Assembly: GCA_001179505.1 (NCBI GenBank)
Contig: CDMY01000027.1
Span: 143,948-207,947 of the forward strand
Origin: Vitrella brassicaformis CCMP3155
Taxonomy: Eukaryota > Protista > Chromerida
DNA: 64,000 nt
Direction: 5' to 3'
Shown here one piece after another: positions 40,272 through 64,000 of this stretch. The notes beneath the pieces were generated by a model. It did not search any database. It was not told the origin of the DNA and worked only from the letters and a program-made list of their open reading frames with translations. Made by a program: the position numbers and the translations under genes. Positions within the stretch are counted from its first letter, which is position 1. The number at the start of each line of letters is the position of its first letter.

Positions 40272-41937
40272 ATGACGTCGGCTGCCTCAGGCTGCATTCT
40301 TCTTCTCTTGGGGCCCGTCTTGTTGAGCGCCGAGGCCGTCGATGACGCCGTCCTTGACCTCTACAGGACACCAAGGGAGGGCTCGCTGTCTTATTACTGG
40401 AATCTGAGCGAGTCGCAACGCGGGACGTGCTTCCAGTGGCCTGAGCCGGCCGCCGGCAAGAATGGCGTGTGGACAAGGTGGGAGACACACACATTGTCAA
40501 GGATGTGCAACCAAGGCTTCTGGACTGCCCTATATGGCCAATCGACGCTGTCTTCTGCCTTTTTGTTGCAGCGTAGCGTTACCTGTCGTGTCGTCGCAGA
40601 CCTTTTACGACGGGAGGACTTGCGGCATGTGCATCGAGTTCCTCCACACGGATGTCGGCCGGGGGCCGCGCTACTTGGGGTCCAAACATGGAGGGCCAGA
40701 GGAGCACCAACCGCCAGCCAACGAGCGGACTCGTCTGTTTGTCAACAATGCGTGAGCTGCCGGCTGATACGTCCATGGAGACACACATCTGTGCCTGTGT
40801 CTGTCTCCATCTGCCCATGTTGCCGGCAGCTGTGGCGACTGCGAGTATGAGAATCAGATGGACGTGTCGCTCAATAGCAGGTCGGCCTTGCACACACACC
40901 TACACACACACATATATGAGCGCACTCAGCAAAGGAAGACACAAAGATGACCATCTTATGTCTTGTGTCGATCGGCAGGAAGGGGCTGTGGCAAGCGACC
41001 TGGGTGGCTGTGGACTGTGAGCCAGACACCACTCCCGTGCAGTTCATCTTCGGCCGTGGCTCCTCGGAGCACTTCATCGGGGTAGCCTGACTAACAGAGA
41101 CATGGCCCAAACATCACGCCCATGTATTGTGTGTTAGTCTATCTCTTGGATGCAGTTGCAGGCCCGCAATCTGCCGATACCCGTCAAGGGTATCGAATAC
41201 TACCATCCGATCAACGACAAGTGGTATACGATGAGCCAAGGCTTCACAGGTCTGCTCATATCGGCCGGCCATGCAGTGGATGAGAGAAAGGGTACATACT
41301 GACATGTGTTGTGTTATATCCGGTATGCATCACTCACTGGACGGACGCAGGCATGTTCAAGTTCCAAGCGACAGAGACTGGCCTTGGCTGGCCCGACGAG
41401 CTCTTGAAGCCTCCATTGCGGGTTCGAGTCACCTCACTCAAGGCAAGCAACCAAGCAAGCCCCCTCAACCACCACTTCCCACATCCATCCCTGTCTCCCC
41501 CCTGTCCTGTTTGCCTTCAGGGGCAGGCTCTCGAGACAAATGTCTCCCGCATAGGGGAGGCCTTCGAGGTCATCGACTCTGATCCACCCATATTTTTTGA
41601 GGGCATCACGGGCGACGCCCCCACCGGCTCATGCACCGCAGTTGAAGAGGCCAGCAGGACGCCATGCGGCCCCTCAGACGTGAGTGAGAATGGCTGTGCG
41701 CTGCTCCACTGCTGCTGGAGTGGAGAGGGAGAGGAAGGCCCGTCGTGTTACCGCCGTGAGGGGGATGAGAGGACCGATTTGTCATCAGGTGGCCAACGTG
41801 TTACGGATCAGTACGACTCGAGTGCATGGAAGCCACACAGGAGGCTGCCGTGGCTGCTGGTTGGTGTGTTGGTCTGCGTCAGGTGGCTAGCTTGTCAACG
41901 ACCCACCATTGCGCTGGCTGATGTGGTGATGTGGTGA
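40272..41937 (+). CDS. Expansin-like protein (DPBB + CBM63) with C-terminal trefoil domain and TM segment
   Basis: Signal MTSAASGCILLLLGPVLLSAEA; FYDGRTCGMCIE...FVNN(A)CGDC...MDVS...GLWQATWVAVDC; GSSEHFIG|LQARNLPIPVKGIEY...LRVRVTSLK|GQ; trefoil CTAVEEASRTPCGPSDVSENGCALLHCCW...PSCY; WLLVGVLVCV. Confidence 0.75.
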
Positions 41938-44751: not shown

Positions 44752-47700
44752 ATGGTGGTGCCATCTCTGATCGAGACTGGCACCAAGAAGCTGGACATCG
44801 CCCGCAAGAAGGGCCACAGACTGTCACTGGAGCTGAGGCGACGGCTTGGCGTCGTCATCGTCACACTCTGCCTGCTGGTCGCCGCATCCACATGGCTCGC
44901 CAGGTCGCTCGTCCTACTCGTGTCCATCATCTACGAGATCGGCGTGAGCGCTTCGCCGCGACTGCGGCTGGTGCAGGCCACCCGGCCATGGCGGCTGTTC
45001 GGCACTTACACCGTGCTGCAGCTGATCTTGCTCACCCTGATGGAGACCAGATTCACACTGCCCACGACCGTTGCTGTGGAGAGCAGCAAGAGCGGGCAGG
45101 GGGGAGGGTCTGGTGAGCAGCAGCTGGTGCTGAACGAGCAGCCGCCTGCCGCTGCTGCTGCTAATCCTGCTGCTGGTGTCAAAGGGGTGGTGGTTGACGA
45201 AGATGACGATACCCTGGTCATCGAGGAAGAGCCAGCAGCGGGGCCCGAGCAGATCAGGTGACTGTCAGAGGGGGGGATGGATGGGAGGGAACAGACTAGA
45301 CTGGTCTCTGAGGACACCTTTCGTCGTGTGTGTGGTGTGTGGTGTGTGTGTGTATGTTGCAGCATTGTGGTCCCAGTGCGCGATGAGGAGCTGTACCTGA
45401 CCAAGACCATCGAGTACACCGTCAACGACACGCCGGCCCACATGCTCAGGGAAATACTCATCGTCGACGACGCATCAGACAAACCAGGCAGGCACACATA
45501 CATACCAGGCAGGCACACATACCACACTACACACGCGTCCCTGTCATTTGTGTCTGTGTTTGTGTGTCATCTATCCCATCCATCCATCAGTTGAGAAGAT
45601 GTTGGAGGAGGAGTTGGATCGCAAGTACTGGCCCAAGGTGAAGATCCTCCGCTACGACGAGAGGCAGGGACTCATCAGGGCAAGAATCGCTGGCGCCGAC
45701 GCCGCATCGGCACCATACATCGTACGACAGACACCACACAAAGGAAGGACGTCCCCAACACATGACGTGACGGACAGAGACGCCCATGGCCTCGGTGTGT
45801 GTGTCTGTGTGTCCGTGTGTGTGTTTGGGTGCAGTTGTTCCTCGACGGTCACTGCCGTCCCATCCCCGGGTGGCTCCCACCACTCATACGCAACCTCAAG
45901 GAAAACTACAAACGGTGCCAAGGGATGTGGGAACACACATTGGAACCCATGGATGAGCACACCTGCGAATGTCTGTGTCTATGTGTGTGTGTGTGTGTGT
46001 GTGGCTTGCTGTGTTGCAGGATAGTTGTGCCGATAGTGTCCGACGTGAACGGCACAACATGGCAGGAGATCCCGGCGAGGGGCGTCAAGATGATGTTTGA
46101 GTGGGACTTCAACTTCAATTGGTACGACGACAACACTCCCGAGGTGCCCGTGGCCTCCGGCGGCATTCTAGCCATCACCAAACAATGGTACACACACATG
46201 GGCAGCAGGCGGGCCTTTTCTTGCTCGATTCGATCATCGTGTCTCTGTGTGTGTGTGTGTGCGTGTGTCTGTCTGTCTGGTCATCAGGTGGATAGAGAGC
46301 GGCAAGTATGACCCCGGGATGCGCGAGTGGGGCGGGGAGAACATCGAGCAGTCTATACGAGTCTGGCTATGCGGTACGCACATTGTGGGGCAACACACAA
46401 CACTTGACACAGCAGACACAAAGGAGGGCAGCTTTGTGTTATTCTTCAACCAATGCCACATGCAGGTGGTGAGATCATTGTGGAGCGGAATTCCAGGATA
46501 GGACACATCTTCAAACGACCACCCAAACCCAACAAAGTCAGTGTGCCCACCAAAAGAGCTGTTCGTCCCAGAATGCGCTGAACGTCCCTCTCCTGGTGTG
46601 CGTCCGTGCCGTGCCGTCGTGTGCAGATAACGATACCCAATCAAGTGCAGAGAAATCACGTACGTGGCTGGCTGAGTCATTGATTACGAAGTGCACATCC
46701 ATGTGTGCGTGTGTGTGGAGTGCAGGCGCGAGCGGCCAAGGTGTGGCTGGACGATTACTACAAGTACTTTGTCGAAGCACAGCCCATGGCAAAGACACTT
46801 GACCTCGGTAGGTACACAACACTGACAGACACACCCACACAAATAGCCATGGCTGGGTGTGGTGTGGTGTGGTGTTGTGTGTGCAGGTCCCGGTTTGGAG
46901 CAGCGGATGGCTCTCCGGCCGGCACTCAAGTGCAAAGACTTCCAATGGTAAGTAACCACTGACGCACTCGACGGACACTACCCCATCTCCGTCTGCTACA
47001 CGCTGTCCTGTCTGTGTGTGTGCATTAATTCAGGTATGTGGATAAGTTCCGGCATGCCTTTGAACGAAAGGGGCTCCTTATGGAAAGTGAGCAAGATTGC
47101 TGCACAGACAGACAGACATACATATCTCATTCTCCCTCTGTGGTGACTGTGGTTAGACTTCCACCATCTGCGCCACACGGCCTCCCGTCTGTGTCTGACG
47201 GCCGTCGAGGCCGACAAGGACAAACCAAAGGACGACTGGAGACACAAAGACCACCTCATACTCGTCAGCCAACCACACACCCACCACACACACCCAGGCC
47301 TCCACCATTCATCCAGTCCCCCCTCTCCCCCTCCCTGTCTGTCTGTCTGTCGGTGTGTCAGGAGCCGTGCAAGCGCCCCGACGACCGCCAGCGATGGTCG
47401 ACTGTCGGTGGGAACCGCATGCTATTCAACAGGAAGGTCAAGAAGTGCCTCGACCGGTTCTCCATCCCCTTCGGCAACGAGGAGGAGCGAAGGCCCATTC
47501 TGTGGGAGTGCGACTGGCTCAACGTCCCGCTGGGCAAGAACCAGAACCAGCTGTGGCAGCACGACCAACACCCAGCCACCGACACCCCCAAACATGACGG
47601 GGCGCACGAGCCGAGGACGGGCCATGTGTTTGCCGTGCCGAATGGCTTCAATGGGAGAGCGTCCAGGCCAGGGGAAATGGTGAGTGAGTCAGTGAGGGTG

Positions 47701-48043
47701 TGAGTTGGGGCCCGAGGGGGGAAGGGGGGAGGGAGGGAGCAAGAGCATATTGGCGAGTGCGTTGTCTGTCTCGTGTGCTTCGCAGGAGCTGGATCCAGGA
47801 TTGGCGACGGACAGCGGATCTCTGTGTCTGACTGCAAAGCTCCTGTACCACGAAGCATTCCAAGACAAAAAGGTGGGTGGGTGCGATGGGCCCTGGAAGC
47901 ACAGCACCAGAGGAAAAGTGTGTGTGATGTGGCGGTGTGTGCAGCTTCGTCGTCACGGCCACCTGCCGACGGAGCCCTACCTGGCGCCCTGCAGGCCGGT
48001 GACGGATGACCCATGGCAGGACACCCAGGGATGGGAACCGTAA
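44752..48043 (+). CDS. GALNT: Polypeptide N-acetylgalactosaminyltransferase (GT27) with ricin-B lectin domain
   Basis: SIVVPVRDE...EILIVDDAS; [12 protein letters not shown]; FLDGHC (DxH); ASGGILAI; [23 protein letters not shown]; SRIGHIFK; [10 protein letters not shown]; lectin CLT/CLD...QNQLW; stop at 48043. Confidence 0.92.
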
Positions 48044-50748: not shown

Positions 50749-52249
50749 GTGGGCGCTCGTAGTGGGTGCATTTTTGCGCTCCTTCTCCCTCCAAGCGTTA
50801 CACGGGACACACTGCGATCATGACGGCCACCATCCTGACATCGATCATGGAAGACAGCGGGTGTGATGCGGTGGGGGAGGGAGGGACGCCCCATAAGCGA
50901 CGCAGGGTGGAGCTGAGCCACGGACAGACCAATACACATGTTAGATAGTGACAGGTGGTGTTTGGTAAGCGTGTGGACTCACTCGCCTCGCTGCTGATCA
51001 GTGTGTATTGGTAGAGGTTCGTATTTCAGCTAGCTGAGCGGTATTAGGAATGCATGCATTTCTGACCGAGTGGCCGTGATTGTCCAATGGTTTCTGTGTC
51101 TCAACTGATGCCAGCTGGGTGTAGTGCAGACAGACACACAGACACGTCACACACCACTCAAAACCACCACAGCACCCAGCAAGGCGTGCAGGCAGGTATG
51201 AATACGTATCTGCGAACGGCTGGCCTTTCTCGAGGAGGCAACGTGACGGTCTATCCTCGGGAGACACTCAGACTAAGTCACTGAAAAAACAGTTTCTAGA
51301 TGGCTGTGCCATCAGGTGTGTGTGTGTGAGTGTGTATGTGCAGCCATGTGTGTGTGGATGTTGGTATGGATATCGACAAGACCAAGTGGCTCTTCACACC
51401 CGTACATACCCACATGGACTAGACCACCATGGCGGCGGGCACCATCGGCACAGAAGTGGCCGAGAAATGGCTGGGACAAACACCATGTGGCACCCACTAT
51501 GAAACGACCCGTTTCGCCGCCGCCGACAAAAAAGAGTGCAGCGCCGTACCGCACTCGTGCACAACACAGCACATCGCACCCACCACCCAGGACAGCACAC
51601 TCCACCTTGATATAAAAACACTTTTCCCCTCTCTCTTAAAGCAACCAGGAAGTACGCACGGCGACACACACCCCTGCGGTGCCGTGCCGTGCGAGCCCTC
51701 TTTGTTTACCAAAATCGTCATGGCCAAAAAGAGTCAAGACCGCAAAACCATCAATCACCGCATGTCACGGAGGAAAGACAGACAGACAGACAGACACTGG
51801 CGCGCTTCAATAAGGTGCTTCTCTCGTCAGCGAGCCGTCACAAGCGTGCGTCACTCTTCTGCAATCCAATCCTCACACACATGCAATCAAAGCGCGCATC
51901 GCATGCCATGCACCTATCTATCCTGTTGACAATAGACGAGGGCAGTAGCAAGTAGGCACGCTCCGATCCAGCCAGTGAGTTTCGACACATACATACATAC
52001 GAGTGAGTCCAGAACATAACACTCTCTCTGGCCACGCCATGGCCGCCACGATCGGACATATGGGTGGCCCAGCCCACGGTACGCACGGTGCGTTCGGTGC
52101 GTACGTACATCTGCGCACGTACACACCCTTTATCTATCTACACATACAATTCCACACACGCATACGCACACACACACACGCACACATACACACACGCAAC
52201 ACAAGACGACAAAGATAGAGCAGAGCAGAGCACGTCGACTGGTAGATAA

Positions 52250-52480
52250 ACACCAGACAACAGACAAGACAAGACAAGACTTAAGACAAAGCACCGAGAG
52301 ATGTTGAGGAAATGAGAGAACTTTGTAAAAAGTGACTGACCCAGATCAGACAGACAGACAGACACCGGATCAGAGAGAGAGAGAGAGACAGAGACGACAC
52401 ACACCACTGATAGATAAACACCGAAACATAACATAACATAACATAACAAATGACAAGACAAGACAAGACAAGACACAAAA
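52250..52480. repeat. Pentanucleotide/dinucleotide microsatellite cluster (CAAGA)n, (ATAAC)n, (GA)n
   Basis: Direct reading. Confidence 0.85.
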
Positions 52481-52591: not shown

Positions 52592-55500
52592 TTATCGCCT
52601 GAAGCTTGGCACACACCCCACAGTCATGCGCCGGCGCGTCTTGCCCCAGCCCTTGCCCTTGGTGCTGTCCACACACAGGGCGTCAAAGCGCCGGTCCTCC
52701 TCGTCCAGGCCGAAGTCACCGATGGTCGCGGGCACTGACTTGAGCAGGCTCCGCTGGCTCCTGTTGGCGACTACCACCCTCCCAATGGCAGCACCGGTCT
52801 GGGAGGAGAAGGGCAGCCTGAGCTTCCTGTACACTGTCCTGACAGAGCTGAGGGGATTGGCCATGAGGTCCTTAAAAACTACGTCAGCAAACTGGCCCTT
52901 CAGGTGGGCGTGGCGCCTCCTGAAGTCAGCCGCTGCTCTGGCGTTGGCCGCCATCTGCTGCAGCTCACTCTCGGCCAGTTTGCATACGTCGACCGCCATA
53001 AGGCCACGACGGAGAGACAGCACCTCCTCACAGCGGCCGGCGACGGTCTCGCATGCATCCCTGACAGACAACCAGACAGACACAGAAGAAAGATGATTAG
53101 ACAGACAGAAAAAGAGAGAGGATAATTGACCAACACAACACCAGCGAGCTCGCCCATCGTTGCGCTACCGGTGGGCGAAGATGATCTTTGCTCCGGGGTA
53201 GGTCGCCAAGATATCGTCAAGGTGGCCCACATGGTCCGACGACGCCAGTAGCCACTTCTTTGGCTCGCCTGCCCGCTGCCACTGCAGGTGCTGCAGGAAG
53301 GTCTTGTGGAAGGTGTAGCTCGGGTGGTTGCTCGACAGCCACGACTGGTACACGGGGGCATCGAACTGTGTGGCAAAGGAGGCAGATCGGAGCGAGTTTT
53401 CGAGAATCATTGAATCGTCAAAGGGCGTGTCGGCTGTGAGGGTGCCGAGGCGGGTCAGGTAGTCGTTGGTCGAGAACATCAAATCCATGGCCTCCTGGGC
53501 AGCAACAAGCCGTGTCTGAGAATCCTGGACAGACAGACACAAGTCAGACAGATAGACAGACAGACAGACGATCAGCATGAAGGTCATGCACATGAACGCC
53601 ATATTGCCATCAATAACGTCCACCCACTCACCTCTTGGGGGGATGCACCCTGCACGTACTCGCCCTGCTCGCCAAATGGGTATAGCATCTCGCTGAATGT
53701 CGGTGCCCGGTTGGCCTCATCGCAGGCCAGCAGCTGCTGCACGAGTGACACGGAGACTCGGTCGAAACCCACAACGAAGATGGGCTGCTCTATCTGCTGG
53801 CGAAGGATGGCGGGGTGGCTGTGGGCCTCGGCCATGTAGAGCAGGTTGCAGAAGGCCTGGCGGACCCTTTGGCTCAGCAGGAACCTGCCCAGGAAGGACA
53901 TGTCCTTGCCCTCCGGCAGGGCCGACTTCACCAAGACATCAGCAGCCGCGAGCACATCTTCCTCGGAGAGCACCAGCTGCTCCAGTCCTGTCTGTTGCCG
54001 CGCCATGTCGAGGAGCTCCTGAGGGTCCAGAGGGATGGCATTGGCATCGTCTGACGGCGAGGCGACAGTGGAGGAATCGCCGTCAGATCCGCCGGGCTTG
54101 GCCAGTCGCTGGCGAAGGCTCTTGGCAGCCTTCTGCATCATCTTCTGCATCATCACCTCCATGGTGTCCCATACGAAGGGCTCGCGCTTCCACGTGGAAG
54201 AGACAGGGTTGTCGAGGCGTTCGCGGCCCAGGCCGCCGGCACGTGCCTCAACGACGACGTACGCGTTGGCGCCTGCCATTCCAAAATTGCTGGCACTACC
54301 AATGAGCGTGCCAGTGTGCTTGGTCTCTTCTGTGGGCTCAACTTTGACGCCTCCTCCCCCTTGGATCGGCAGGACGAAGGGGAAGTCTCCAGGGCTGTCG
54401 ATGTCGATGTGTGGGTTGAGCTGACTGAGATGAAGGTTGGGCGGCGCCATGCCGTGGCGCAAGGTGAGGACGACCTTTATGAGGCTCGTGATCCCCGATG
54501 CGGCCTCGGGGTGGCCCACGGTGCTCTTAAAGGCGCCCAACACAAGCGGCGATGAAGCAGGCCTCTTGCGGAACACGGCCCTTAGGGCCCCGACCTCGAT
54601 CGCGTCACCCATAAGCGTGCCGGTCCCGTGCACTTCGGCAAACGAGAGCGCGCTGGGCGGCAGGCCGGCCTCTTTCAGTGCCTCGCGGATGACGACTTGC
54701 TGCGCCGGTCCCGAGGGAGCGGTGAGGCTCGCGCCACAGTTGTGGTTGGCAGCGCTACCGCGGATCAATGCGTACGGCTCGACGTCGCCAGACGGGTCGA
54801 GACGCTGAAGGAACGCAGCCGTCACACCTTCGGCGCGAACGTAGCCGTTGGCACCCGAATCGAATGTTTTGCAGCGGCCGTCGATGCTCAGCATCTGGGC
54901 CCTGAGAGAGGACACACACGAGCAAGCAAACAAGGGTCAAGTAATATCTTTCCAGTATCCTTACCTGCAATCGGCTATGTAGGCATGTTGTGAGAGGATG
55001 AGATTGACGCCGCCACACAGTGCACCCTCTCTGCATGCGTCCGCCGAGAGCAGTGCCTTAACGCCGAGGTCGACAGCGATGAGGGACGAGGAGCAGCCCG
55101 TGTCGACAGAAAGCGACGGCCCCTTGAGACCGAAGATGTAGCTGATGCGATTCGACAGTAGGCAAGATGCGGTGCCCATAGTGGAGAACCTTGATGCTTC
55201 GTGCTGCATTAAGCACCAATCCTGCGACATGGACCCGACGTAGACGCCGATGCTCTTCCCATTCAGGGCTTGCAACTTGCCGCTGCCGAACACTCCAGCG
55301 CTGTGGAATGCCTCGTAGCTGACCTCCAGCAGAAGTCTCTGCTGAGGGTCCATGAACTTAGCCTCGAGGGGCGCGATCCGGAAGAACTGGTTGTCAAAGA
55401 GCTCCACGCCATCGATGAAGGCACCCGCCTTCGTGTAGTAGCTGTCAGGCACCTGGCCCGTCGGGTCGTACCACAGATCCGCATTCCACCGCGCTCTGGG

Positions 55501-58500
55501 GATCGTGGTGACGCAATCGCGCCCCTCACACATCACCCGCCAGAAGCTCCCCAGCGAGTCAACGCCACCGGGCAATCGGCAGGCCAGACCCATGATGGCG
55601 ATTGGCGGGCTTCCGCCGCGACTGTCGAGAGCCTGCACTTTGACCCTGTCGTCGACGGCAGGCATCTCGTCCGCCGCGCCAGAGATCTCATTGCAGATGA
55701 AGCCGATGATGGCGTTCAGAGTGGGGTAGTCGAACAGAGTGGTGGCGGGCAGCTTGACGCCGATCTTGGACGACAAGGCATTTCTGAACTCGACAGCGCC
55801 GAGTGAGTCGATGCCCAGCTCCTGCAGAGGCGAGTCCAGGGGAGGCTCTTCCGTCATGCCAAGCACCGTCGCAGCCGTCTCCACGACTGCCTTGTGGATG
55901 CGCTCTTTGAGAGCCGCCGCGTCCATGCTGCGCAGCTCGGCAGACACGCCTGCAGCCGCGCCTTCGGTGGCAGCCGACGCCACCGTCTCGAAGAAGGGCG
56001 GGATGGCAATATACATCGACAGGAAGGTTTGCCACTTGACGAGAGCACAGCACGTCACCCCGACGCTCTCAGAGTGCCGCATGACGTCGCCGAGCACCCG
56101 AAGGCCGAGCTCGTTGGTGATGCCGCGCATTCCCCCCTTGGCGAGCTGCTGCATCATTTCGGCCGCCATGCCCTGTTCTGCCCACGGGCCCCACTGGATG
56201 CTCTGGGCGGCGAGCTTCTTGGATCGGCGGTACTCAGTCAGGGCATCCAGACACGAGTTGGCCGCAGAGTAGTTGGCTGGACGAAGGCCGAAGAACGAAG
56301 ACATCGACGAGAACATCACAAAATGGTCGAGTGGAAGCTTCGTGTCGACCGACAGCTCATGGAGATGCATCGCACCCATCACCTGGAAACACGGACGGAG
56401 GAGACAACAGACATGTCACTGCTCGTGAAAGCGGTAGGCAATCTCACCTTGGGCAAGTAGACCTTCTCCACCTTGGCCTGTGTCTGGTTGCTGAGGGCAG
56501 CGTCGTCAGGCACACCAGCGGCGTGAAAGATGCCCCTCACTGCGTTGTTGGGCAGTCGCTCATCCAGATCGGCGAAGGCCTTCTCACACTCGTCCTTCCT
56601 GGACACGTCTGCGGCCAAGCAGTGGATGGCCGCCTTGGAGCGGCCATGAGGTTCTGGTGCCGTCAGCTTTTTCCACAGCTCAGAGGCAGCCACCGCATCG
56701 GTCGGCCTGCCGCGCCTCGACACAAGAGCGATGTGTTTGGCTCCCTCCTCCACCAGCCAGTCGGCCACGAGGAGCCCGAGCCCCCCGAAGCCGCCCGTGA
56801 TGACGTAGCATCCGTCGATATCTGTGGTCTGGTCGGCAGTCCCATATGCCTCGTTTGCCGTGCCTGCCATCGGGCGGCGGAGGGCGCTCGGTATTTGTAT
56901 GACGACTTTGCCGATGTGCTGGGCCCTCTGCAGGAACCTGAAGGCCGCGATGCCGCCGGTTGTCTTGTCGGCGGAAGTCATGTCGAATGTGTGGAGGGCG
57001 ATGGGCTTGATCTTGCCACTGTCGACCAGGCCCCGGACGCGACCGAGCATGGCGCCGAACCACTTGGGATCTTGCTCTATCATCTGGTCGATGGCGATCG
57101 CCTCGTACATGGCCAAGTCGGGCCGCCTGGCGAGCACCTCCTCTTTGCTCCAGATGCCGCGCTTGCCCAGCTCCATGAAGCGGCCCTTGGGCGCCATGGA
57201 GTCGAGCGACAAGGGAATGAAGTCCTCGATGAGGCAGTTGAGCACCACGTCGACCTTGCTGTTGGCCTGCTGCATGTCGGCCTGGAACTTGCTGGCGTCG
57301 CGCGAGCTCGTGACGAGCTGCAGGCCCTGCTGTCGTAGGAAGTCTTGTTTGTGCTGGCTGCCCGCCGTGCCGTAGACATTGGCCCCGACGGCCCTGCAGT
57401 ACTGGATGGCCGCGAGCCCCACGCCGCCCGATGCCGCGTGCACGAGGACGTTGTCTCCCTTGGTGACCTTGGCGAGCTCTCGGAAGGCCACCTCGACGGT
57501 GACAAAGACGGTCGGCAGGGCGGCCGCCTTTTCGAAGGTCATCGATGCGGGCTTGATGGCCATCAGGTTGGCCTCCGTCGTCACGTAGGTCCGCAGGCAA
57601 CCGGGGGCCACGCCGTAGACGTCATCTCCCACACACAGATGACTCACGCCCTCCCCAACGCCCACAATCGTCCCCGAGCAGTCGCCGCCCGGCGGGCCGG
57701 GGTCGCCCGGATACAATCCCATGACGTTCAACACGTCACGGAAATTCAGACCGATCGCACGAACACGAACCTCGATGCAGCCGACACGAGGTGGAATGCG
57801 GGCCGCCTGGGCCAGTGGTCTTAGCTTGAGGTTGTTGATGGCCCCCCGCTGTGGCATGAACTGCTCAACCGCTCCCCTGATGTCCACCTTTCCCTTCTGC
57901 AATCGCGAGTAGAAGCACGCGGACTGGCTTGGGGTCTCGTCGGTCGCAGGTGTCTTGCGGAGGGCCACCTCCGGTTCGTAGCCCTCGATGCCTTTCTGCG
58001 TGTCGACCAGCACGGTAATCTGCTNNNNNNNNNNNNNNNNNNNNNNNNNNNNNNNNNNNNNNNNNNNNNNNNNNNNNNNNNNNNNNNNNNNNNNNNNNNN
58101 NNNNNNNNNNNNNNNNNNNNNNNNNNNNNNNNNNNNNNNNNNNNNNNNNNNNNNNNNNNNNNNNNNNNNNNNNNNNNNNNNNNNNNNNNNNNNNNNNNNN
58201 NNNNNNNNNNNNNNNNNNNNNNNNNNNNNNNNNNNNNNNNNNNNNNNNNNNNNNNNNNNNNNNNNNNNNNNNNNNNNNNNNNNNNNNNNNNNNNNNNNNN
58301 NNNNNNNNNNNNNNNNNNNNNNNNATGACGACTTTGCCGATGTGCTGGGCCCTCTGCATGAACCTGAAGGCCGCGACGCCGCCGGTGACTTGGTCGGCGC
58401 TGCTCATGTCGAATGTGTGCAGAGGGATGGGCTTGACCTTGCCAACATCGACCAGGCCCCGGAGGCGGTCGAGCATGCCGCCGAACCACTTGGGATCTTG

Positions 58501-61500
58501 CTCCATCATCTGGTCGATGGCGATCGCCTCGTACATGGCCAAGTCGGGACGCCTGGCCAGCACCTCCTCTTTGCTCCAGATGCCGCGCTTGCCCAGCTCC
58601 ATGAAGCGGCCCTTGGGCGCCATCGCGTCGAGCGAGAAGGGAATGAAGTCCTCGATCAGGCAGTTGAGCACCACGTCCATCTTGCTGTTGGTCTGCTTCA
58701 TGTCGGCCTGGAACTGGTTGGCGTCGCGCGAGCTCGTGACCAACTGCACGCCCTGCTGTCGCACGAAGTCTTGTTTGTGCTGGCTGCCGGCCGTGCCGAA
58801 GACGTTAGCGCCAATGTTTCTGCAGTACTGGATGGCCGCGAGCCCCACGCCGCCGCTGGCCGCGTGCACGAGGACGTTGTCTCCCTTGGTGACCTTGGCG
58901 AGCTCTCCAAAGGCGACCTCGACCGTGACAAAGACGACCGGCAGGGCGGCCGCCTCTTCCAAGGTCATGGATGCGGGCTTGAGGGCCAGCAGGTTGGCGT
59001 CCGTCGTCACGTAGGTCCGCAGGCAGCCGGGCGCCACGCCGTAGACGTCATCGCCCACACTCAGGTGACTCACGCCCTCGCCCACGCCAACCACCGTCCC
59101 CGAGCAGTCGCCCCCCGGCGGACCGGGGTCGCCAGGATACAATCCCATCACATTCAACACGTCACGGAAATTCAGTCCGACAGCACGAACACGAACCTCG
59201 ATGCAGCCCACGTGAGGCGGGATGCGGGCCGCCTGGGCCAGTGGTCTTAGCTTGAGGTTGTTGATGGCCCCCCGCTGTGGCATGAACAGCTCAACTGCTC
59301 CCCTGATGTCCACCTTTCCCTTCTGCAATCGCGAGTAGAAGCACGCGGACTGGCTTGGGGTCTCGTCGGTCGCAGGTGTCTTGCGGAGGGCCACCTCCGG
59401 TTCGTAGCCCTCGATGCCTTTCTGCGTGTCGACCAGCACGGTAATCTGCTCCAGGAATCCGTCGACGGTGTCAGGCGACGTGGGGTCGATGTCGACGCAG
59501 CCCATCTTGATGAGAGTCCCGATGTTGTTCTCCAGCTCCAGCCGTGCTGTCTTGGAGAATCCCCACAGGCCGGCGTGACGAGGCACCTCGGGCAGCGGGT
59601 CGTCGGGGAGCGCCCGCTGGGTGCCGCGAGTCACGAGCCAGATGGCAGGCAATACATCGACGTTGGTGCCCAGCTTGAGGATGACTTGTGCCATGCTGAG
59701 GGCCTCGCTGACGACCACCACTGGGTCGGATCGCTTCTCGAGGCTGCCCATGTGGAGGATGCAGTCCCACTGGCTCTTGTCAGCAAGGATCTTCTCCATG
59801 TCTATGGCGTCCGGCGTCTCGCCGCAGGCGATCAGCCGGGAATCCTTACTCATGCCGGCCTCCACGAGTCTGTTGTACAGCATCTTCTTCCATGCAGCCG
59901 GCACGCCCAAGACCAGCAATCTTGGTTCAGCGGCAGCAGCCCCCTCCTCGGCAGCAGCAGGCTCCTTGCTTGGCTCGGCCTGTTTCCACGTGACCTCCCA
60001 GAGGATGTCCCTCGGGATGCCTACGGGCGGCGTGGTGTCCATCTGCCGCAGGCTGACGTTCTTCAGGTAGGCGGCCATCCGGCCCCTGGTGTCCTGAATG
60101 ACCACATCGATGGTGGCAGCACGCTCTTCGCGCTTCAGCAGGCGGGCGTGGCTCCACAGCTCGCTCGACGGGCTCACACGCGCCAGTGAGACCCTCTCCA
60201 CCCCCGCGGGCACCAGAAGTGCCTTGGTATTCCCCTTGCCGGACTGATCGGCCGCGAGTACCGCAGCGGCTGACTGCAGCGCACCATCTAGGATGGCGGG
60301 ATGCAGCCGGAAGCCCCCCTCGAATGGCTTGATGGGCGGGTCGAGCTTGAGCAGGGCCAGAGCCTGGTCGTCCGACACCAACAGCTCCCTCACCGTCTGG
60401 AACCTCGGACCGTACGCCAAACCGATCTCCTTGAGCTGCGTGTAGAACTCTGCAACTGGGGCGACCTTGTTGCACCGGTGTTTGAGGGCCGTGAGGTCCT
60501 CCACCAGGTCTCTCTCGCCGTCCCCCGCACCCGCGACCTTGACCAAACGAGCGGTGGCATGCGGCACAAAGTCCTCCTCGCCTGGCGCCCGTGTGGAGAT
60601 CTCGACGGCCATGGGGGGCATGGCAGCGTCGGTATCGGTGGTCGGCTGCTTCTCGACGGTGACACAGAGGGTGGGNNNNNNNNNNNNNNNNNNNNNNNNN
60701 NNNNNNNNNNNNNNNNNNNNNNNNNNNNNNNNNNNNNNNNNNNNNNNNNNNNNNNNNNNNNNNNNNNNNNNNNNNNNNNNNNNNNNNNNNNNNNNNNNNN
60801 NNNNNNNNNNNNNNNNNNNNNNNNNNNNNNNNNNNNNNNNNNNNNNNNNNNNNNNNNNNNNNNNNNNNNNNNNNNNNNNNNNNNNNNNNNNNNNNNNNNN
60901 NNNNNNNNNNNNNNNNNNNNNNNNNNNNNNNNNNNNNNNNNNNNNNNNNNNNNNNNNNNNNNNNNNNNNNNNNNNGCCTTTCTGCGTGTCGACCAGCACG
61001 GTAATCTGCTCCAGGAATCCGTCGACGGTGTCAGGCGACGTGGGGTCGATGTCGACGCAGCCCATCTTGATGAGAGTCCCGATGTTGTTCTCCAGCTCCA
61101 GCCGTGCTGTCTTGGAGAATCCCCATAGGCCGGCGTGACGAGGCACCTCGGGCAGCGTGTCGTCGGGGAGCGCCCGCTGGGTGCCGCGAGTCACGAGCCA
61201 GATGGCAGGCAATACATCGACGTTGGTGCCCAGCTTGAGGATGACTTGTGCCATGCTGAGGGCCTCGCTGACGACCACCACTGGGTCGGATCGCTTCTCG
61301 AGGCTGCCCATGTGGAGGATGCAGTCCCACTGGCTCTTGTCAGCAAGGATCTTCTCCATGTCTATGGCGTCCGGCGTCTCGCCGCAGGCGATCAGCCGGG
61401 ACTCCTTACTCGTGCCGGCCTCCACGAGTCTGTTGTACAGCATCTTCTTCCATGCAGCCGGCACGCCCAAGACCAGCCACCGCGGCTCCGCAAGCCCCCC

Positions 61501-64000
61501 GACAGCACCTGCTGGCCTCTTGGCCGCTTCGCCCTGTTTCCACGTGACCTCCCAGAGGATGTCCCTCGGGATGCCTACGGGCGGCGTGGTGTCCATCTGC
61601 CGCAGGCTGACGTTCTTCAGGTAGGCGGCCATCCGGCCCCTGGTGTCCTGAATGACCACATCGATGGTGGCAGCACGCTCTTCGCGCTTCAGCAGGCGGG
61701 CGTGGCTCCACAGCTCGCTCGACGGGCTCATACGCGCCAGTGAGACCCTCTCCACCCTCGCGGGCACCAGAACTGCCTTAGTATTCCCCTTGCCGGAGTG
61801 ATCGGCCGCGAGTACCGCAGCGGCTGACTGCAGCGCACCGTCTAGGATGGCGGGATGCAGCCGGAAGCCTCCCTCGAATGGCTTGATGGGCGGGTCGAGC
61901 TTGAGCAGGGCCAGAGCCTGGTCGTCCGACACCAACAGCTCCCTCACCGTCTGGAACCTCGGACCGTACGCCAAACCGATCTCCTTGAGCTGCGTGTAGA
62001 ACTCTGCAACTGGGGCGACCTTGTTGCACCGGTGTTTGAGGGCCGTGAGGTCCTCCACCAGGTCTCTCTCGCCGTCCCCCGCACCCGCGACCTTGACCAA
62101 ACGGGCGGTGGCATGCGGCACAAAGTCCTCCTCGCCTGGCGCCCGTGTGGAGACCTCGACGGCCATGGGGGGCATGGCAGCGTCGGCATCGGTGGTCGGC
62201 TGCTTCTCGACGGTGACACGGAGGGTGGGCATCTTCGGCTCAGGGTGGTGTTTGTCGTCAGCTTTGGCCAGCATGAGCGGCCGCTCGAACGACACCTCCT
62301 CCAGGTGCACCAGCTCCTCCGCCGATGACGTCTTGGCGCCCCTCTCCGCCTGCGCAGCCGCCAGGCCTGCACAGGCCATAATGTCAATCCACCCTGCGCC
62401 AGGCATCAGAGGCACGCCTGCGTAAAAATCAAGACATAGAAACACAGCCAGCCACATGATGTGTTTTTCAAGCAGCAAGGAGGTGTGTGCTTCGAAGGTC
62501 AGGCCGGTCGGGGTCGTGTGCCGGCGACCGAGCGCAGGATGGGCCGCCTCGACCCACGGAAAGCTCCGGTGCTTCCACTGGTGAGTGCCCTTGAGCTTGG
62601 CGAGGCACGTCGCGACCGTCAGGCTGACACCGTCCTGGTCGTCCTTGGTGGGGTCCATGGGCGCCAGCCAATGCAGGTCCATCTCTTGGGCAACGTCTTG
62701 CAGGCACTGCTTGCCCATTCCGATAAGTGTGGGCCGTGGGCCAACCTCAACGATCACACGGGCGCCGGCCTCGACCATGGCTCGCATGCCGTCCATGAAG
62801 CGGACGGGGTGGGGGATGTGATTTGCCCAGTACTCGCCCCTCACGACCTCGTCGCCGGCCACCTTGCCGCTGACGTTGGACACCAGGGGGATCTTGGGCG
62901 TCTTGAGGTCCACGGTCGACAGCACCTGCTGGAAGGGAGCCACCGTCTCGGCCATCAGCGGCGAGTGGAAGGCATGTGACACTCTGAGGAGCTTGTAACG
63001 GCCCCCCACGTTGAGCGCCTTCATCACGGCCTCGACCTCGCCCCGCTTGCCAGACACCACCACACTCTTGGGGCCGTTGACAGCCGCCACAGAGACGGTC
63101 CTGGTCTGATCCTCGCCAACGGATGCGATGCCCTTGAGCACCTCCTCCTCGCTGAGACGACAGGCGGCCATGACGCCATCATTCTGTGGAGCGTCGTTCA
63201 TGATTCGTGCTCGTTCCGCGATGAGCTTGAGTCCGTCTTCGAGGCTCATGACGCCGGCGACCGTGGCGGCCACGTACTCGCCCAGGCTGTGGCCCATGAC
63301 CACATCGGGCGTCACACCACGGCTCCGCAGCAGCTCAGCCAACGAGTACTCGACAGCGAAGATCAGCGGCTGGGAGAACCGAGTCTGGTCGATGAGCTTC
63401 TGCATTCTGACCTTGTCCTTGTCGGTCTTGGGGTAGAGGATGCCCGTAAGTGGAACGGGCAGCAGCGGATCCAAGATGGTCGCGCACTCGTCGATGCACT
63501 CCCGGAATACCTCCTCGTTGCCATAGAGCTTGCGCCCCATCTCGACGTACTGGGAACCCTGCCCGGTGAACATGAACCCGATCTTGTTCTGCAGCGCCGC
63601 CGGCGCCTTGTCCTCGTTGAGCATCTCATCGATCTGCGCGGCACTGAGCGCCTTGGTCTCCACCAGGATATGGGCATTGGCGCCACCGAATCCGAATGAG
63701 CTGACGCCGCCGACCATGCCGTCCTTGCCCGGCAGACCGGACACCAGTGGCACTGGCTCGGTGGGAAAGACCACTGGGAAGGTGTCGTTCATCGCTAAGT
63801 AGGAGTTCAGCTGAGTGAAGTGCAGATTGGGGGCCGCGCAGCCGTGCAGGAGCGTCATGATGAGCTTCGCGAGACCCGCTATGCCCGCGGATCCCTCCAA
63901 GTGGCCGATATTGGTCTTGAGTGCACCCAGCACAAGAGGATTCTTGTCACTGCGGCCAGGGCCGAACACAGCCTTCAGGGCGCCGAACTCGATGGGGTCG
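52592..64000 (-). CDS. Modular type I polyketide synthase, 3' part: KS(partial)-AT-DH-linker-[gap]-DH'-linker-ER-[gap]-ER-KR-ACP-KS-sulfotransferase-like; extends beyond window end
   Basis: KS KTNIGHLEGSAG; AT FTGQGSQ, GHSLGE, HAFHS; DH HPAILDGALQ; ER VLVHAASGGVG (two copies); KR YVITGGFGGLG, NYSAAN; ACP LGIDSLGAVE; KS2 DTGCSSS, HGTGT, GHPEAASG; ST IEQPIFVVG...YPGAKIIFAHRD. Introns 56383-56447, 54902-54964, ~53527-53630, ~53062-53169. Confidence 0.95.
58025..58324. other. Assembly gap (300 N placeholder)
   Basis: Run of N. Confidence 1.
60676..60975. other. Assembly gap (300 N placeholder)
   Basis: Run of N. Confidence 1.

What the first reader, a model, noticed from the sequence alone, without database searches (positions are those of the whole stretch)
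52592..55950. PKS terminates in ACP-KS-sulfotransferase with no downstream AT, ACP or thioesterase
Seen: after the last KR and ACP (GIDSL) comes a complete KS with an intact Cys-His-His triad (DTGCSSS, HGTGT, GHPEA). It is fused directly to a sulfotransferase-fold domain that includes the helical N-terminal extension typical of bacterial Stf-like enzymes (ARQQTGL...GRF...NLL...HPAIL...IEQPIFVVG), then the stop codon. Known: canonical release uses TE or a reductase, and CurM/Ols/PKZILLA-type termini use ACP-ST-TE. Inference: a catalytically intact terminal KS with no acceptor ACP implies an unusual off-loading route, such as a trans-acting ACP, KS-catalysed transfer to a small-molecule acceptor, or hand-off through the ST-fold domain. 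This is a candidate undescribed long-chain lipid/polyketide termination system in an alveolate.
Basis: partly seen in the sequence, partly recalled or inferred. Interest (0 to 1): 0.82.

Follow-up and report, generated by a model that had tools for sequence, protein, structure and literature searches.

The report
Polyketide synthase tail missing its release domains
A giant lipid-building enzyme gene of the alga Vitrella brassicaformis really does end in a ketosynthase fused to a sulfotransferase-like domain, but sister genes show this is a shortened version of a known "reduce-then-sulfate" tail that lost its carrier and reductase domains, and the sulfotransferase part has lost its cofactor-binding motifs.

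Summary
On the minus strand, four exons with GT-AG introns encode KR-ACP-KS-linker-sulfotransferase-like domain, then a stop at 52592-52594. cDNA-bearing contigs from two public runs carry all three predicted splice joints. The KS keeps its Cys-His-His triad. No AT, ACP, TE or reductase follows, either in the gene or in the 52.6 kb downstream.

The interpretation needs revising. The genome is Vitrella brassicaformis. Two paralogues in it (CEL96740.1, CEL93275.1) end in KS-ACP-TR-ST. They align colinearly with the window on both sides of a gap of about 570 residues, so the window's tail is an in-frame ACP-TR deletion derivative. The TR-ST tail itself occurs in Chromera and several apicomplexan-lineage organisms. 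It was noted in 2013 for SwfB and coccidian synthases, and this scan found it twice on other DNA of this genome.

A sibling contig (CDMY01000151.1) has also lost the KS, leaving ACP-ST-like. Its junction appears in two public runs.

In the Vitrella clade the ST-like domain has lost three PAPS-binding signatures, yet it still looks selectively constrained.

My reading is a truncated release module with a probable pseudo-sulfotransferase, which is a new variant of a known kind. The mechanism is untested. Interest 0.4.

The parts
56176..56382 (-). C-terminal part of the last KR domain. It opens the exon that follows a short GT-AG intron.
   Evidence: Pfam KR 1.8e-18. The upstream splice was read from the sequence.
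55696..55890 (-). Last ACP (phosphopantetheine site GIDSL).
   Evidence: Pfam PP-binding 1.2e-15.
54237..55611 (-). Terminal ketosynthase, interrupted by the 63-nt intron 54902-54964. It carries DTGCSSS, HGTGT and GHPEA, but NFGMAGAN where relatives have xFGFGGxN.
   Evidence: Pfam ketoacyl-synt N and C; KS alignment; spliced joint in X1 and X6.
54049..54236 (-). Post-KS linker (NPVSSTWKREPFVWD...). About 54048-54171 holds the scar where paralogues carry ACP-TR. The sibling KS-less copy breaks at 54239/54240.
   Evidence: Colinear alignment to P0152 and P0003; blastn of L003; loose ends at 54239 in X1 and X6.
52595..54048 (-). Sulfotransferase-like domain of the Stf1/Stf9 type, with a helical N-terminal extension. 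It spans three exons; the introns are 53525-53631 and 53061-53168.
   Evidence: Pfam Sulfotransfer_3; 61-67% identity to the ST tails of the Vitrella paralogues; relatives match PDB 2ZQ5 and 2Z6V, and exon D matches 2ZQ5 weakly; splice joints.
53746..53769 (-). Degenerate 5'-phosphosulfate-binding loop: GFDRVSVS, where canonical relatives have G(L/M)(N/P)R(S/T)GTT.
   Evidence: Motif alignment; Stf1 and Stf9 alignments.
53231..53251 (-). LLASSDH, where relatives have LLKMPxH. The Lys is lost and the His is kept.
53036..53059 (-). Altered 3'-phosphate-binding region: (HR)DACETVAG against HRDPxxxxGS. The Arg is kept; the Pro and Ser are lost. His-Arg lie across the intron at 53170-53174 plus 53060.
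52592..52594 (-). Stop codon TAA. The C-terminus ...VGCVPSFRR is conserved with CEL96740.1 (...VGCAPSFRR).

Best explanation
This is the 3' end of a multimodular, fully reducing type I PKS/FAS-like megasynthase of Vitrella brassicaformis.

Its ancestor ended, as two paralogues still do, in an AT-less last module plus a release cassette: KS-ACP-TR-ST. That cassette probably performs a last extension, reductive release by the thioester reductase, and then handling of the alcohol by the ST. An in-frame deletion of about 570 residues removed ACP and TR and left KS-linker-ST-like. A later event in a sibling copy removed the KS too.

Shown here: the architecture, the splicing, the transcription, the deletion relationship, the degenerate PAPS motifs, and signs of continued constraint on the ST-like domain.

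Inferred: the tail no longer extends or releases the chain by itself. The KS can at most accept the acyl chain from the preceding ACP. The ST-like domain is a PAPS-incompetent pseudo-enzyme kept for a non-catalytic role such as lipid binding, dimerisation or docking. The long saturated chain would then leave the last ACP through a trans-acting partner, either a TR-ST paralogue or a hydrolase.
For: - **Domains and splice model:**
- **Transcription:** cDNA joints at all three introns in runs from two studies.
- **Relatives of the ST:** phmmer against 1.84 billion representatives plus Pfam. Every long relative I domain-scanned carries TR-ST, with an ACP before the TR wherever the protein extends that far. 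They come from Vitrella (CEL96740.1, CEL93275.1, CEM36688.1), Chromera Cvel_17954, Rhytidocystis, Selenidium, Digyalum and Cardiosporidium.
- **Deletion relationship:** window aa 1-717 align with P0152 1538-2279, and aa 758-1170 with P0152 2853-3268. The ACP-TR between them is absent. Intron positions are shared.
- **Deletion junction seen independently:** the same junction sequence is in contig CDMY01000151.1 (P0155/L003) and in the MMETSP protein P0001. Logan contigs of X3 and X4 span the KS-to-linker join, and the X4 contig also spans the scar.
- **KS-less sibling:** L003 matches the window at 56388-55677 and 54239-53478 only. Its junction 30-mer equals the loose end at 54239 in X1 and X6.
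- **ST motifs:** GFDRVSVS, LLASSDH and HRDACETVAG against canonical GLNRSGTT, LLKMPFH and HRDPxxxxGS. The two closest Vitrella TR-ST paralogues (P0152 and P0003) share the degenerate forms, so motif loss came before the deletion.
- **Constraint after the deletion:** differences between near-identical copies give 15 synonymous to 12 non-synonymous in the ST part, against 0 to 8 in the linker. Window against L003 is 96.9% identical in the exon and 91.9% in the intron, which also has indels.
- **KS:** GFGG is GMAG only in the window.
- **Downstream:** nothing PKS-like.
Against: - The KS keeps the full Cys-His-His triad. It evolves no faster than the paralogous KS of P0152, and only modestly faster than that of L001 (42 against 25 unique changes, chi-square 4.3; not significant with more distant outgroups). 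Loss of condensing activity is therefore not shown.
- Motif loss makes loss of PAPS binding likely but does not prove it. Nothing was assayed.
- The locus is multi-copy or heterozygous. All four runs differ from the window by about 2-3% in the exons, and their contigs are mosaic. Copy number, and which copy makes protein, are unresolved.
- No trans-acting release partner was identified.
- The synonymous and non-synonymous counts are raw counts from a partial list; 41 differences were not shown.
Confidence: 0.6

Rival explanations
1. The terminal KS is still an active condensing enzyme. It works with a carrier it does not own. That carrier could be the ACP just upstream, reloaded with malonate by the module's cis-AT as in an iterative FAS. 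Or it could be an ACP on a separate protein, as in the split modules of trans-AT PKSs, with the ST-like domain acting as a docking or dimerisation element.
For: The Cys-His-His triad is intact. The KS shows no clear rate acceleration. KS exons are spliced and transcribed. In the paralogues the last module is already AT-less, so its ACP must be loaded in trans or by self-acylation. Self-acylating ACPs and an ACP-KS-TR terminus are reported for TgPKS2 (bioRxiv 10.1101/2023.05.23.541938). The ST-like domain is under constraint despite its lost PAPS motifs.
Against: The gating Phe of GFGG is Met and the next Gly is Ala, in this copy only. A sibling copy dispenses with the KS altogether while keeping the same tail. 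TgKS5, the nearest precedent, was inactive in vitro (same preprint). No partner ACP was found in the window.
Confidence: 0.2
2. One reading: KS-ST is a new off-loading device. Either the KS transfers the chain to a small-molecule acceptor bound by the ST-fold domain, or the ST fold itself takes part in release.
For: There is no TE, TR or ACP after the KS. The ST-like domain is conserved although it is no longer a canonical sulfotransferase. The catalytic-base His and both motif Arg residues are retained.
Against: The arrangement arose by deleting a working release cassette rather than by gaining a function. The same degenerate ST-like domain sits after a normal TR in the paralogues, where no new release chemistry is needed. 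The KS-less sibling keeps the tail. No acyltransferase or hydrolase motif was detected in the tail by Pfam or NCBIfam.
Confidence: 0.1
3. The gene is a decaying, functionless paralogue (an expressed pseudogene in the making) in a recently duplicated PKS family, and the KS-ST tail has no role.
For: Successive domain losses: ACP-TR, then the KS in a sibling. Degenerate ST motifs and an altered GFGG. Many near-identical copies or haplotypes. An unusual stretch in the last KR.
Against: The frame is open for more than 1170 codons across four exons, and all indels seen in the variant copies are in frame. Splicing is correct and the gene is expressed. Synonymous changes are in excess in the ST part and in KR-ACP (47 synonymous to 35 non-synonymous against L003). 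The exon is more conserved than the intron.
Confidence: 0.08
4. Assembly artefact: the scaffold wrongly joins a KS to an ST tail in a repeat-rich region full of N gaps.
For: There are 300-N gaps and near-identical modules just upstream. The runs differ from the window by 2-3%.
Against: The KS C-terminus, linker and ST N-extension lie in one exon with no gap. Logan contigs of X3, X4 and X6 cross the KS-to-linker join, and the X4 contig also crosses the deletion scar. The same scar sequence is in L003 and P0001.
Confidence: 0.02

Closest known systems
Vitrella brassicaformis paralogues CEL96740.1 (AL-ACP-KS-AT-DH-KR-ACP-KS-ACP-TR-ST) and CEL93275.1
   Same: KR-ACP-KS is 53% identical and colinear. 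The ST-like tail is 61-67% identical and carries the same degenerate motifs, the same intron positions and, in CEL96740.1, the same ...SFRR C-terminus.
   Different: They keep ACP and the thioester reductase between the KS and the ST. The window lacks about 570 residues there.
TR-ST (R+ST) release didomain: SwfB of sponge symbionts and the C-termini of coccidian type I FAS (PMC3908369). Also found here in Chromera, Rhytidocystis, Selenidium, Digyalum and Cardiosporidium.
   Same: The ST domain is homologous (Pfam PF13469, Stf1/Stf9-like). It sits at the C-terminus of a fully reducing synthase.
   Different: There is no reductase. The PAPS motifs are canonical in the apicomplexan-lineage members but degenerate here. 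Even for the canonical members the function (alkyl sulfate release) is only predicted.
Toxoplasma gondii TgPKS2 terminus ACP-KS-TR (bioRxiv 10.1101/2023.05.23.541938)
   Same: A terminal KS with an intact Cys-His-His triad follows the last ACP and has no ACP of its own, in the same broad lineage. Its role is unknown, and it was inactive in a decarboxylation assay.
   Different: The TgPKS2 KS is followed by an active reductase. Here it is followed by an ST-like domain and nothing that can release the chain.
CurM/OLS-type ACP-ST-TE termini (known from the literature; mentioned in PMC3908369 and in the TgPKS2 preprint)
   Same: A sulfotransferase-fold domain at the end of a PKS.
   Different: In that system the ST follows an ACP, uses PAPS to activate a beta-hydroxyl, and is followed by a TE. 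Here there is no TE, a KS precedes the ST, and the PAPS motifs are lost. I did not test homology to the CurM ST.
Mycobacterial sulfotransferases Stf1 (PDB 2ZQ5) and Stf9 (PDB 2Z6V); the Stf names are from my own knowledge, as both entries are titled 'putative uncharacterized protein'
   Same: Same family and same N-terminal helical extension. A canonical relative (P0020) matches both at 1e-30 to 1e-32 over nearly the full length. The window's exon D matches 2ZQ5 weakly.
   Different: Those are stand-alone enzymes with GxxRTGTT, LKxPSH and HR(D)P...S motifs, which are not conserved here.

Membership tests
Type I PKS/FAS ketosynthase domain | Match to the ketoacyl-synt N and C domain models | tested here: met
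   Pfam PF00109 1.2e-58 and PF02801 5.8e-35; NCBIfam PKS models.
Type I PKS/FAS ketosynthase domain | Cys-His-His catalytic triad | tested here: met
   DTGCSSS, HGTGT and GHPEA align with DTACSSS, HGTGT and GH(T/L)EG of relatives.
Type I PKS/FAS ketosynthase domain | Conserved GFGG loop (gating Phe and oxyanion region) | tested here: not met
   NFGMAGAN against xFGFGGxN in all six compared KS sequences.
Type I PKS/FAS ketosynthase domain | A cognate downstream ACP (and an AT in cis or trans) to accept the extended chain | tested here: not met
   No ACP or AT after the KS in the gene or in bases 1-52600.
PAPS-dependent sulfotransferase (Pfam Sulfotransfer_3, Stf1/Stf9-like) | Match to the family model or fold | tested here: met
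   PF13469 on exon C (34.7 bits) and exon D (29.2 bits), cut-off 27. The 67%-identical P0002 scores 5.6e-22. PDB 2ZQ5 and 2Z6V are matched through relatives.
PAPS-dependent sulfotransferase (Pfam Sulfotransfer_3, Stf1/Stf9-like) | 5'-phosphosulfate-binding loop R-(S/T)-G-T-T | tested here: not met
   GFDRVSVS. Only the Arg is kept.
PAPS-dependent sulfotransferase (Pfam Sulfotransfer_3, Stf1/Stf9-like) | LKxPxH motif (Lys plus catalytic-base His) | tested here: inconclusive
   LLASSDH. The His is kept and the Lys and Pro are lost.
PAPS-dependent sulfotransferase (Pfam Sulfotransfer_3, Stf1/Stf9-like) | 3'-phosphate-binding HRDP....(G)S motif | tested here: not met
   HRDACETVAG. The Arg is kept and the Pro and Ser are lost.
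PAPS-dependent sulfotransferase (Pfam Sulfotransfer_3, Stf1/Stf9-like) | PAPS binding and sulfuryl transfer | not testable with these tools
   Needs a binding or activity assay.
TR-ST reductive release cassette (SwfB / coccidian FAS type) | Thioester reductase (NAD_binding_4) immediately before the ST, preceded by an ACP | tested here: not met
   There is no NAD_binding_4 anywhere in the tail. P0003, P0007 and P0009 match the window by tblastn only outside their TR regions. The paralogues have it.
TR-ST reductive release cassette (SwfB / coccidian FAS type) | ST domain homologous to that of the cassette | tested here: met
   28-67% identity to the ST of TR-ST proteins over about 330-445 aligned residues.
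CurM/OLS ACP-ST-TE terminus | ST directly after an ACP and followed by a thioesterase | tested here: not met
   A KS precedes the ST and a stop codon follows it. Only the sibling contig L003 has ACP followed by the ST-like domain.
TgPKS2-type ACP-KS-TR terminus | Terminal KS after the last ACP, followed by an active TR | tested here: not met
   The ACP-KS part is present and the TR is absent.

The most novel reading that the evidence does not exclude
The ST-fold domain of the chromerid synthases may be a selected pseudo-enzyme with a new job. It could bind the alkyl product, or it could dock or dimerise synthase tails. If so, the KS-ST protein would hand its chain in trans to an ACP-TR-ST paralogue, or off-load it by a KS-dependent route not yet described. 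The natural series KS-ACP-TR-ST, KS-ST and ACP-ST would then be functional isoforms rather than decay products.
Probability: 0.15. Interest if true: 0.7.

Novelty: new variant of a known kind. Interest (0 to 1): 0.4.

Why it matters
Chain release in apicomplexan and chromerid megasynthases is poorly understood, and no product is known. Terminal KS domains without their own ACP (TgPKS2) and TR-ST tails are both open puzzles. Vitrella appears to hold a natural deletion series of one release module: KS-ACP-TR-ST, KS-ST and ACP-ST. It also holds an ST fold that has shed its PAPS motifs while staying conserved. That gives a small set of constructs with which to test what the terminal KS and the ST-like domain do. 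The finding is not a new termination system as first proposed, and it may be confined to one species.

Tried and rejected
- **Hidden AT, ACP, KS, KR, ER, DH or ST exons downstream.** tblastn of the window's own domains against bases 1-52600 gave only chance hits with E above 0.1. Pfam on ten downstream ORFs gave nothing PKS-like.
- **ACP-TR elsewhere in the window.** tblastn with P0003, P0007 and P0009 matched only outside their TR regions. The only ACP-like match was to the window's own last ACP.
- **NCBIfam on the ST exons.** No family matched.
- **KS decay by relative-rate test.** Not decisive: 42 against 25 versus L001 with P0152 as outgroup, not significant with Rhytidocystis or GHVH outgroups, and P0152's own KS is faster.
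- **The KS-less junction as alternative splicing.** Rejected. There is no AG acceptor at 54240. The junction ACP differs from the window's ACP, and a 30-mer search with 3 mismatches found nothing. The junction lies on a genomic contig that keeps intron 2.
- **P0001 as evidence for a canonical C-terminal half of this gene.** Rejected. Its residues from about 250 onward are 93-100% identical to another Vitrella paralogue (P0008, the CEM36688.1 cluster). It is therefore a mosaic, probably an assembly chimera at the conserved FLQHLQWQ stretch.
- **Look-up of the P0001 contig.** Not on record.
- **Structure prediction.** Not run. The spliced ST domain has no single reference and I did not type it in. 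A proxy model would give confidence values only, not a view of the pocket.

Full report
**What is there**

The feature lies on the minus strand. ORF listing and Pfam show, in order:
- the end of a KR domain;
- an ACP (GIDSL);
- a complete KS (ketoacyl-synt N 1.2e-58, C 5.8e-35);
- a Sulfotransfer_3 domain split over further exons (2.8e-8 and 1.4e-6, both above the gathering score).

Reading the sequence and building the splice model gives these exons...56382-54965, 54901-53632, 53524-53169 and 53060-52592. The three GT-AG introns are 63, 107 and 108 nt long. The model is one open frame of 1170 codons ending in TAA at 52594-52592. The end of the KS, a linker and the N-terminal extension of the ST-like domain all sit in one uninterrupted exon, so this is a true fusion.

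**Transcripts**

One reads call was available, and I laid 4.9 kb. Contigs of runs X1 and X6, from two different studies, carry the joints 54900/54964, 53523/53631 and 53059/53168 exactly as predicted. Runs X3 and X4 show no joints and behave as DNA. So the introns are real, and both the KS exons and the ST exons are transcribed.

Contigs stop 18 nt past the stop codon, at a low-complexity repeat. The C-terminus ...VGCVPSFRR is matched by ...VGCAPSFRR-stop in a paralogue, which supports the stop codon.

**Nothing follows the tail**

- tblastn with the window's own KS, AT, DH, ER, KR, ACP and ST sequences finds nothing in bases 1-52600.
- Ten downstream ORFs have no PKS-related Pfam hit.
- The ACP-TR parts of the paralogues I laid on the window (P0003, P0007, P0009) find no TR anywhere in it, and no ACP other than the window's own last ACP.

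**Whose gene, and what are its relatives**

I ran phmmer with ST exon C against 1.84 billion representatives. It gave 694 hits. The best three are from Vitrella brassicaformis.

Every long hit I scanned with Pfam ends in a thioester reductase followed by the ST, with an ACP before the TR wherever the protein extends that far. By organism they are:
- Vitrella CEL96740.1, CEL93275.1 and the CEM36688.1 cluster;
- Chromera Cvel_17954;
- Rhytidocystis, Selenidium, Digyalum and Cardiosporidium ("type I fatty acid synthase");
- several metagenomic and Logan proteins.

A 2013 paper described this R+ST pairing for SwfB of sponge symbionts. It noted that the only other contiguous R-ST occurs at the C-termini of two coccidian type I FAS, and proposed an alkyl sulfate product, which has not been tested (PMC3908369). 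Two earlier notes of this scan reached the same view for other pieces of this genome. My Pfam results agree with them independently.

**The KS-ST tail is a deletion derivative**

CEL96740.1 reads AL-ACP-KS-AT-DH-KR-ACP-KS-ACP-TR-ST. The locus of CEL93275.1 ends the same way.

The alignment of the window's tail to CEL96740.1 is colinear:
- aa 1-717 (KR-ACP-KS-linker) match residues 1538-2279 at 53% identity;
- aa 758-1170 (ST-like) match residues 2853-3268 at 67% identity;
- the roughly 570 residues of ACP-TR in between are absent.

Intron positions in the KS and the ST are shared. The post-KS linker motif NPVS...PFxWD follows the KS in the paralogue too.

The scar lies at about 54048-54171, inside an exon. 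The X4 contig crosses it, and contigs of X3, X4 and X6 cross the KS-to-linker join. The same scar sequence occurs in a separate genomic contig and in an MMETSP transcript. Misassembly is therefore very unlikely.

**A sibling copy has lost the KS as well**

The word search with the linker plus the ST N-extension found P0155. This is a partial protein on the 1507-nt contig CDMY01000151.1 of the CCMP3155 assembly. It reads KR-ACP ...IIGFIYSEVSG|GLGRERLDNPVSS... linker, then ST-like.

Its DNA matches the window in two blocks only: 56388-55677 at 87% and 54239-53478 at 94%. It skips the whole KS and intron 1 but keeps intron 2. The 30 bases on the ACP side of this junction are exactly the loose end seen at 54239 in runs X1 and X6. 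They are not present in the window.

Many of the 2-3% differences between the runs and the window are the L003 variants. An X4 contig combines such variants with the KS. The locus is therefore multi-copy or heterozygous, with both KS-containing and KS-less forms. I could not resolve copy number.

**State of the two domains**

*KS.* The triad is intact (DTGCSSS, HGTGT, GHPEA). The otherwise invariant xFGFGGxN is NFGMAGAN in this copy only. A relative-rate test gives only a modest excess of unique changes, and the result depends on the outgroup. Decay of the KS is not demonstrated.

A canonical relative matches PDB 2ZQ5 and 2Z6V at 1e-30 to 1e-32. The Stf names for those two entries are from my own knowledge. 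Three conserved PAPS-binding signatures are altered:

| Signature | Window | Canonical relatives |
|---|---|---|
| 5'-phosphosulfate loop | GFDRVSVS | G(L/M)(N/P)R(S/T)GTT |
| Lys/His motif | LLASSDH | LLKMPxH |
| 3'-phosphate motif | HRDACETVAG | HRDPxxxxGS |

That these motifs bind PAPS is established knowledge of sulfotransferases; I did not test it here. The two closest Vitrella TR-ST paralogues (CEL96740.1 and CEL93275.1) share the same degenerate forms. Chromera and the third Vitrella paralogue are degenerate in other ways, while most of the apicomplexan-lineage tails keep canonical motifs. Motif loss therefore came before the ACP-TR deletion.

*Constraint.* The domain still looks constrained.
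- Differences between near-identical copies are 15 synonymous to 12 non-synonymous in the ST part, against 0 to 8 in the linker.
- Against L003, the exon is 96.9% identical and the intron 91.9% with indels. The ST N-extension shows about 6 synonymous to 3-4 mostly conservative changes.
- These are raw counts from a partial list.

**How it most likely works**

*Shown:* a transcribed megasynthase whose tail is KS-ST-like, derived from KS-ACP-TR-ST.

*Inferred:* the tail has lost both the acceptor for a last extension and the release catalyst. The KS could at most take the chain from the preceding ACP. The ST-like domain is probably PAPS-incompetent and kept for a non-catalytic role. The saturated chain would need a trans-acting partner to leave. 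I give this reading about 0.6.

*Rivals:*
- An active KS that borrows the upstream ACP or a trans ACP, with the ST-like domain as a docking element (0.2).
- A functionless decaying paralogue (0.08).
- An assembly artefact (0.02).

The nearest precedent for a terminal KS with no ACP of its own is TgPKS2 (ACP-KS-TR). Its KS5 has the triad but was inactive in vitro, and the authors say that KS-before-TR is widespread in apicomplexans (bioRxiv 10.1101/2023.05.23.541938).

**Novelty and score**

I found no KS-ST terminus in the papers I searched. None appeared among the long proteins I domain-scanned in the top 150 relatives either; 544 weaker hits were not inspected.

The terminus is best filed as a new variant of the known, biochemically untested TR-ST tail. 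So far it is seen in one species only. Its value is as a natural deletion series for testing the terminal KS and the ST-like pseudo-enzyme. Interest 0.4.

Noticed in passing
window 56379-63969 (minus strand): The upstream part of the gene consists of near-identical DH-ER-KR modules repeated at least three times and broken by runs of N. The module number is therefore uncertain and this part of the scaffold is probably collapsed.
   Followed up: no
window 56290-56330 (minus strand; last KR): The last KR reads FSSMSSFFGLRPANYSAAN. The sibling contig L003 has the usual FSSVASLFGNLGQSNYSAAN. The window is one residue shorter and lacks the G..GQ, while the Ser and Tyr are kept.
   Followed up: partly
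L003 (CDMY01000151.1) 38-752 against 747-1507: The sibling contig is a mosaic. Its KR-ACP part is only 88% identical to the window, but its linker-ST part is about 96-97% identical. This suggests recombination or gene conversion between PKS copies.
   Followed up: partly
P0001 (UniRef A0A7S1KFH3, Vitrella MMETSP): This transcript-derived protein joins a window-like linker and ST N-half to the C-half of another paralogue (P0008, the CEM36688.1 cluster). The switch is at the conserved FLQHLQWQRAG stretch, so it is probably an assembly chimera.
   Followed up: yes
window 51500-52363: Contigs of all four runs match this stretch downstream of the stop with almost no differences, while the exons differ by 2-3%. 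Depth in X6 is several-fold higher here. It could be a long 3' UTR, another transcript or a repeat. None of its ORFs has a Pfam hit.
   Followed up: partly
L001 57-1199 and 6930-8137: In the CEL93275.1 locus the first KS and the terminal KS are nearly identical in sequence. This is another sign of recent module duplication in this gene family. The annotated gene there is split in the middle of the terminal KS.
   Followed up: no
window 47038-47703 (+): This ORF has a weak Ricin-type beta-trefoil lectin hit (E 4e-4, below the gathering score). It lies about 5 kb from the expansin-trefoil gene that another reader noted at 40272-41937.
   Followed up: no
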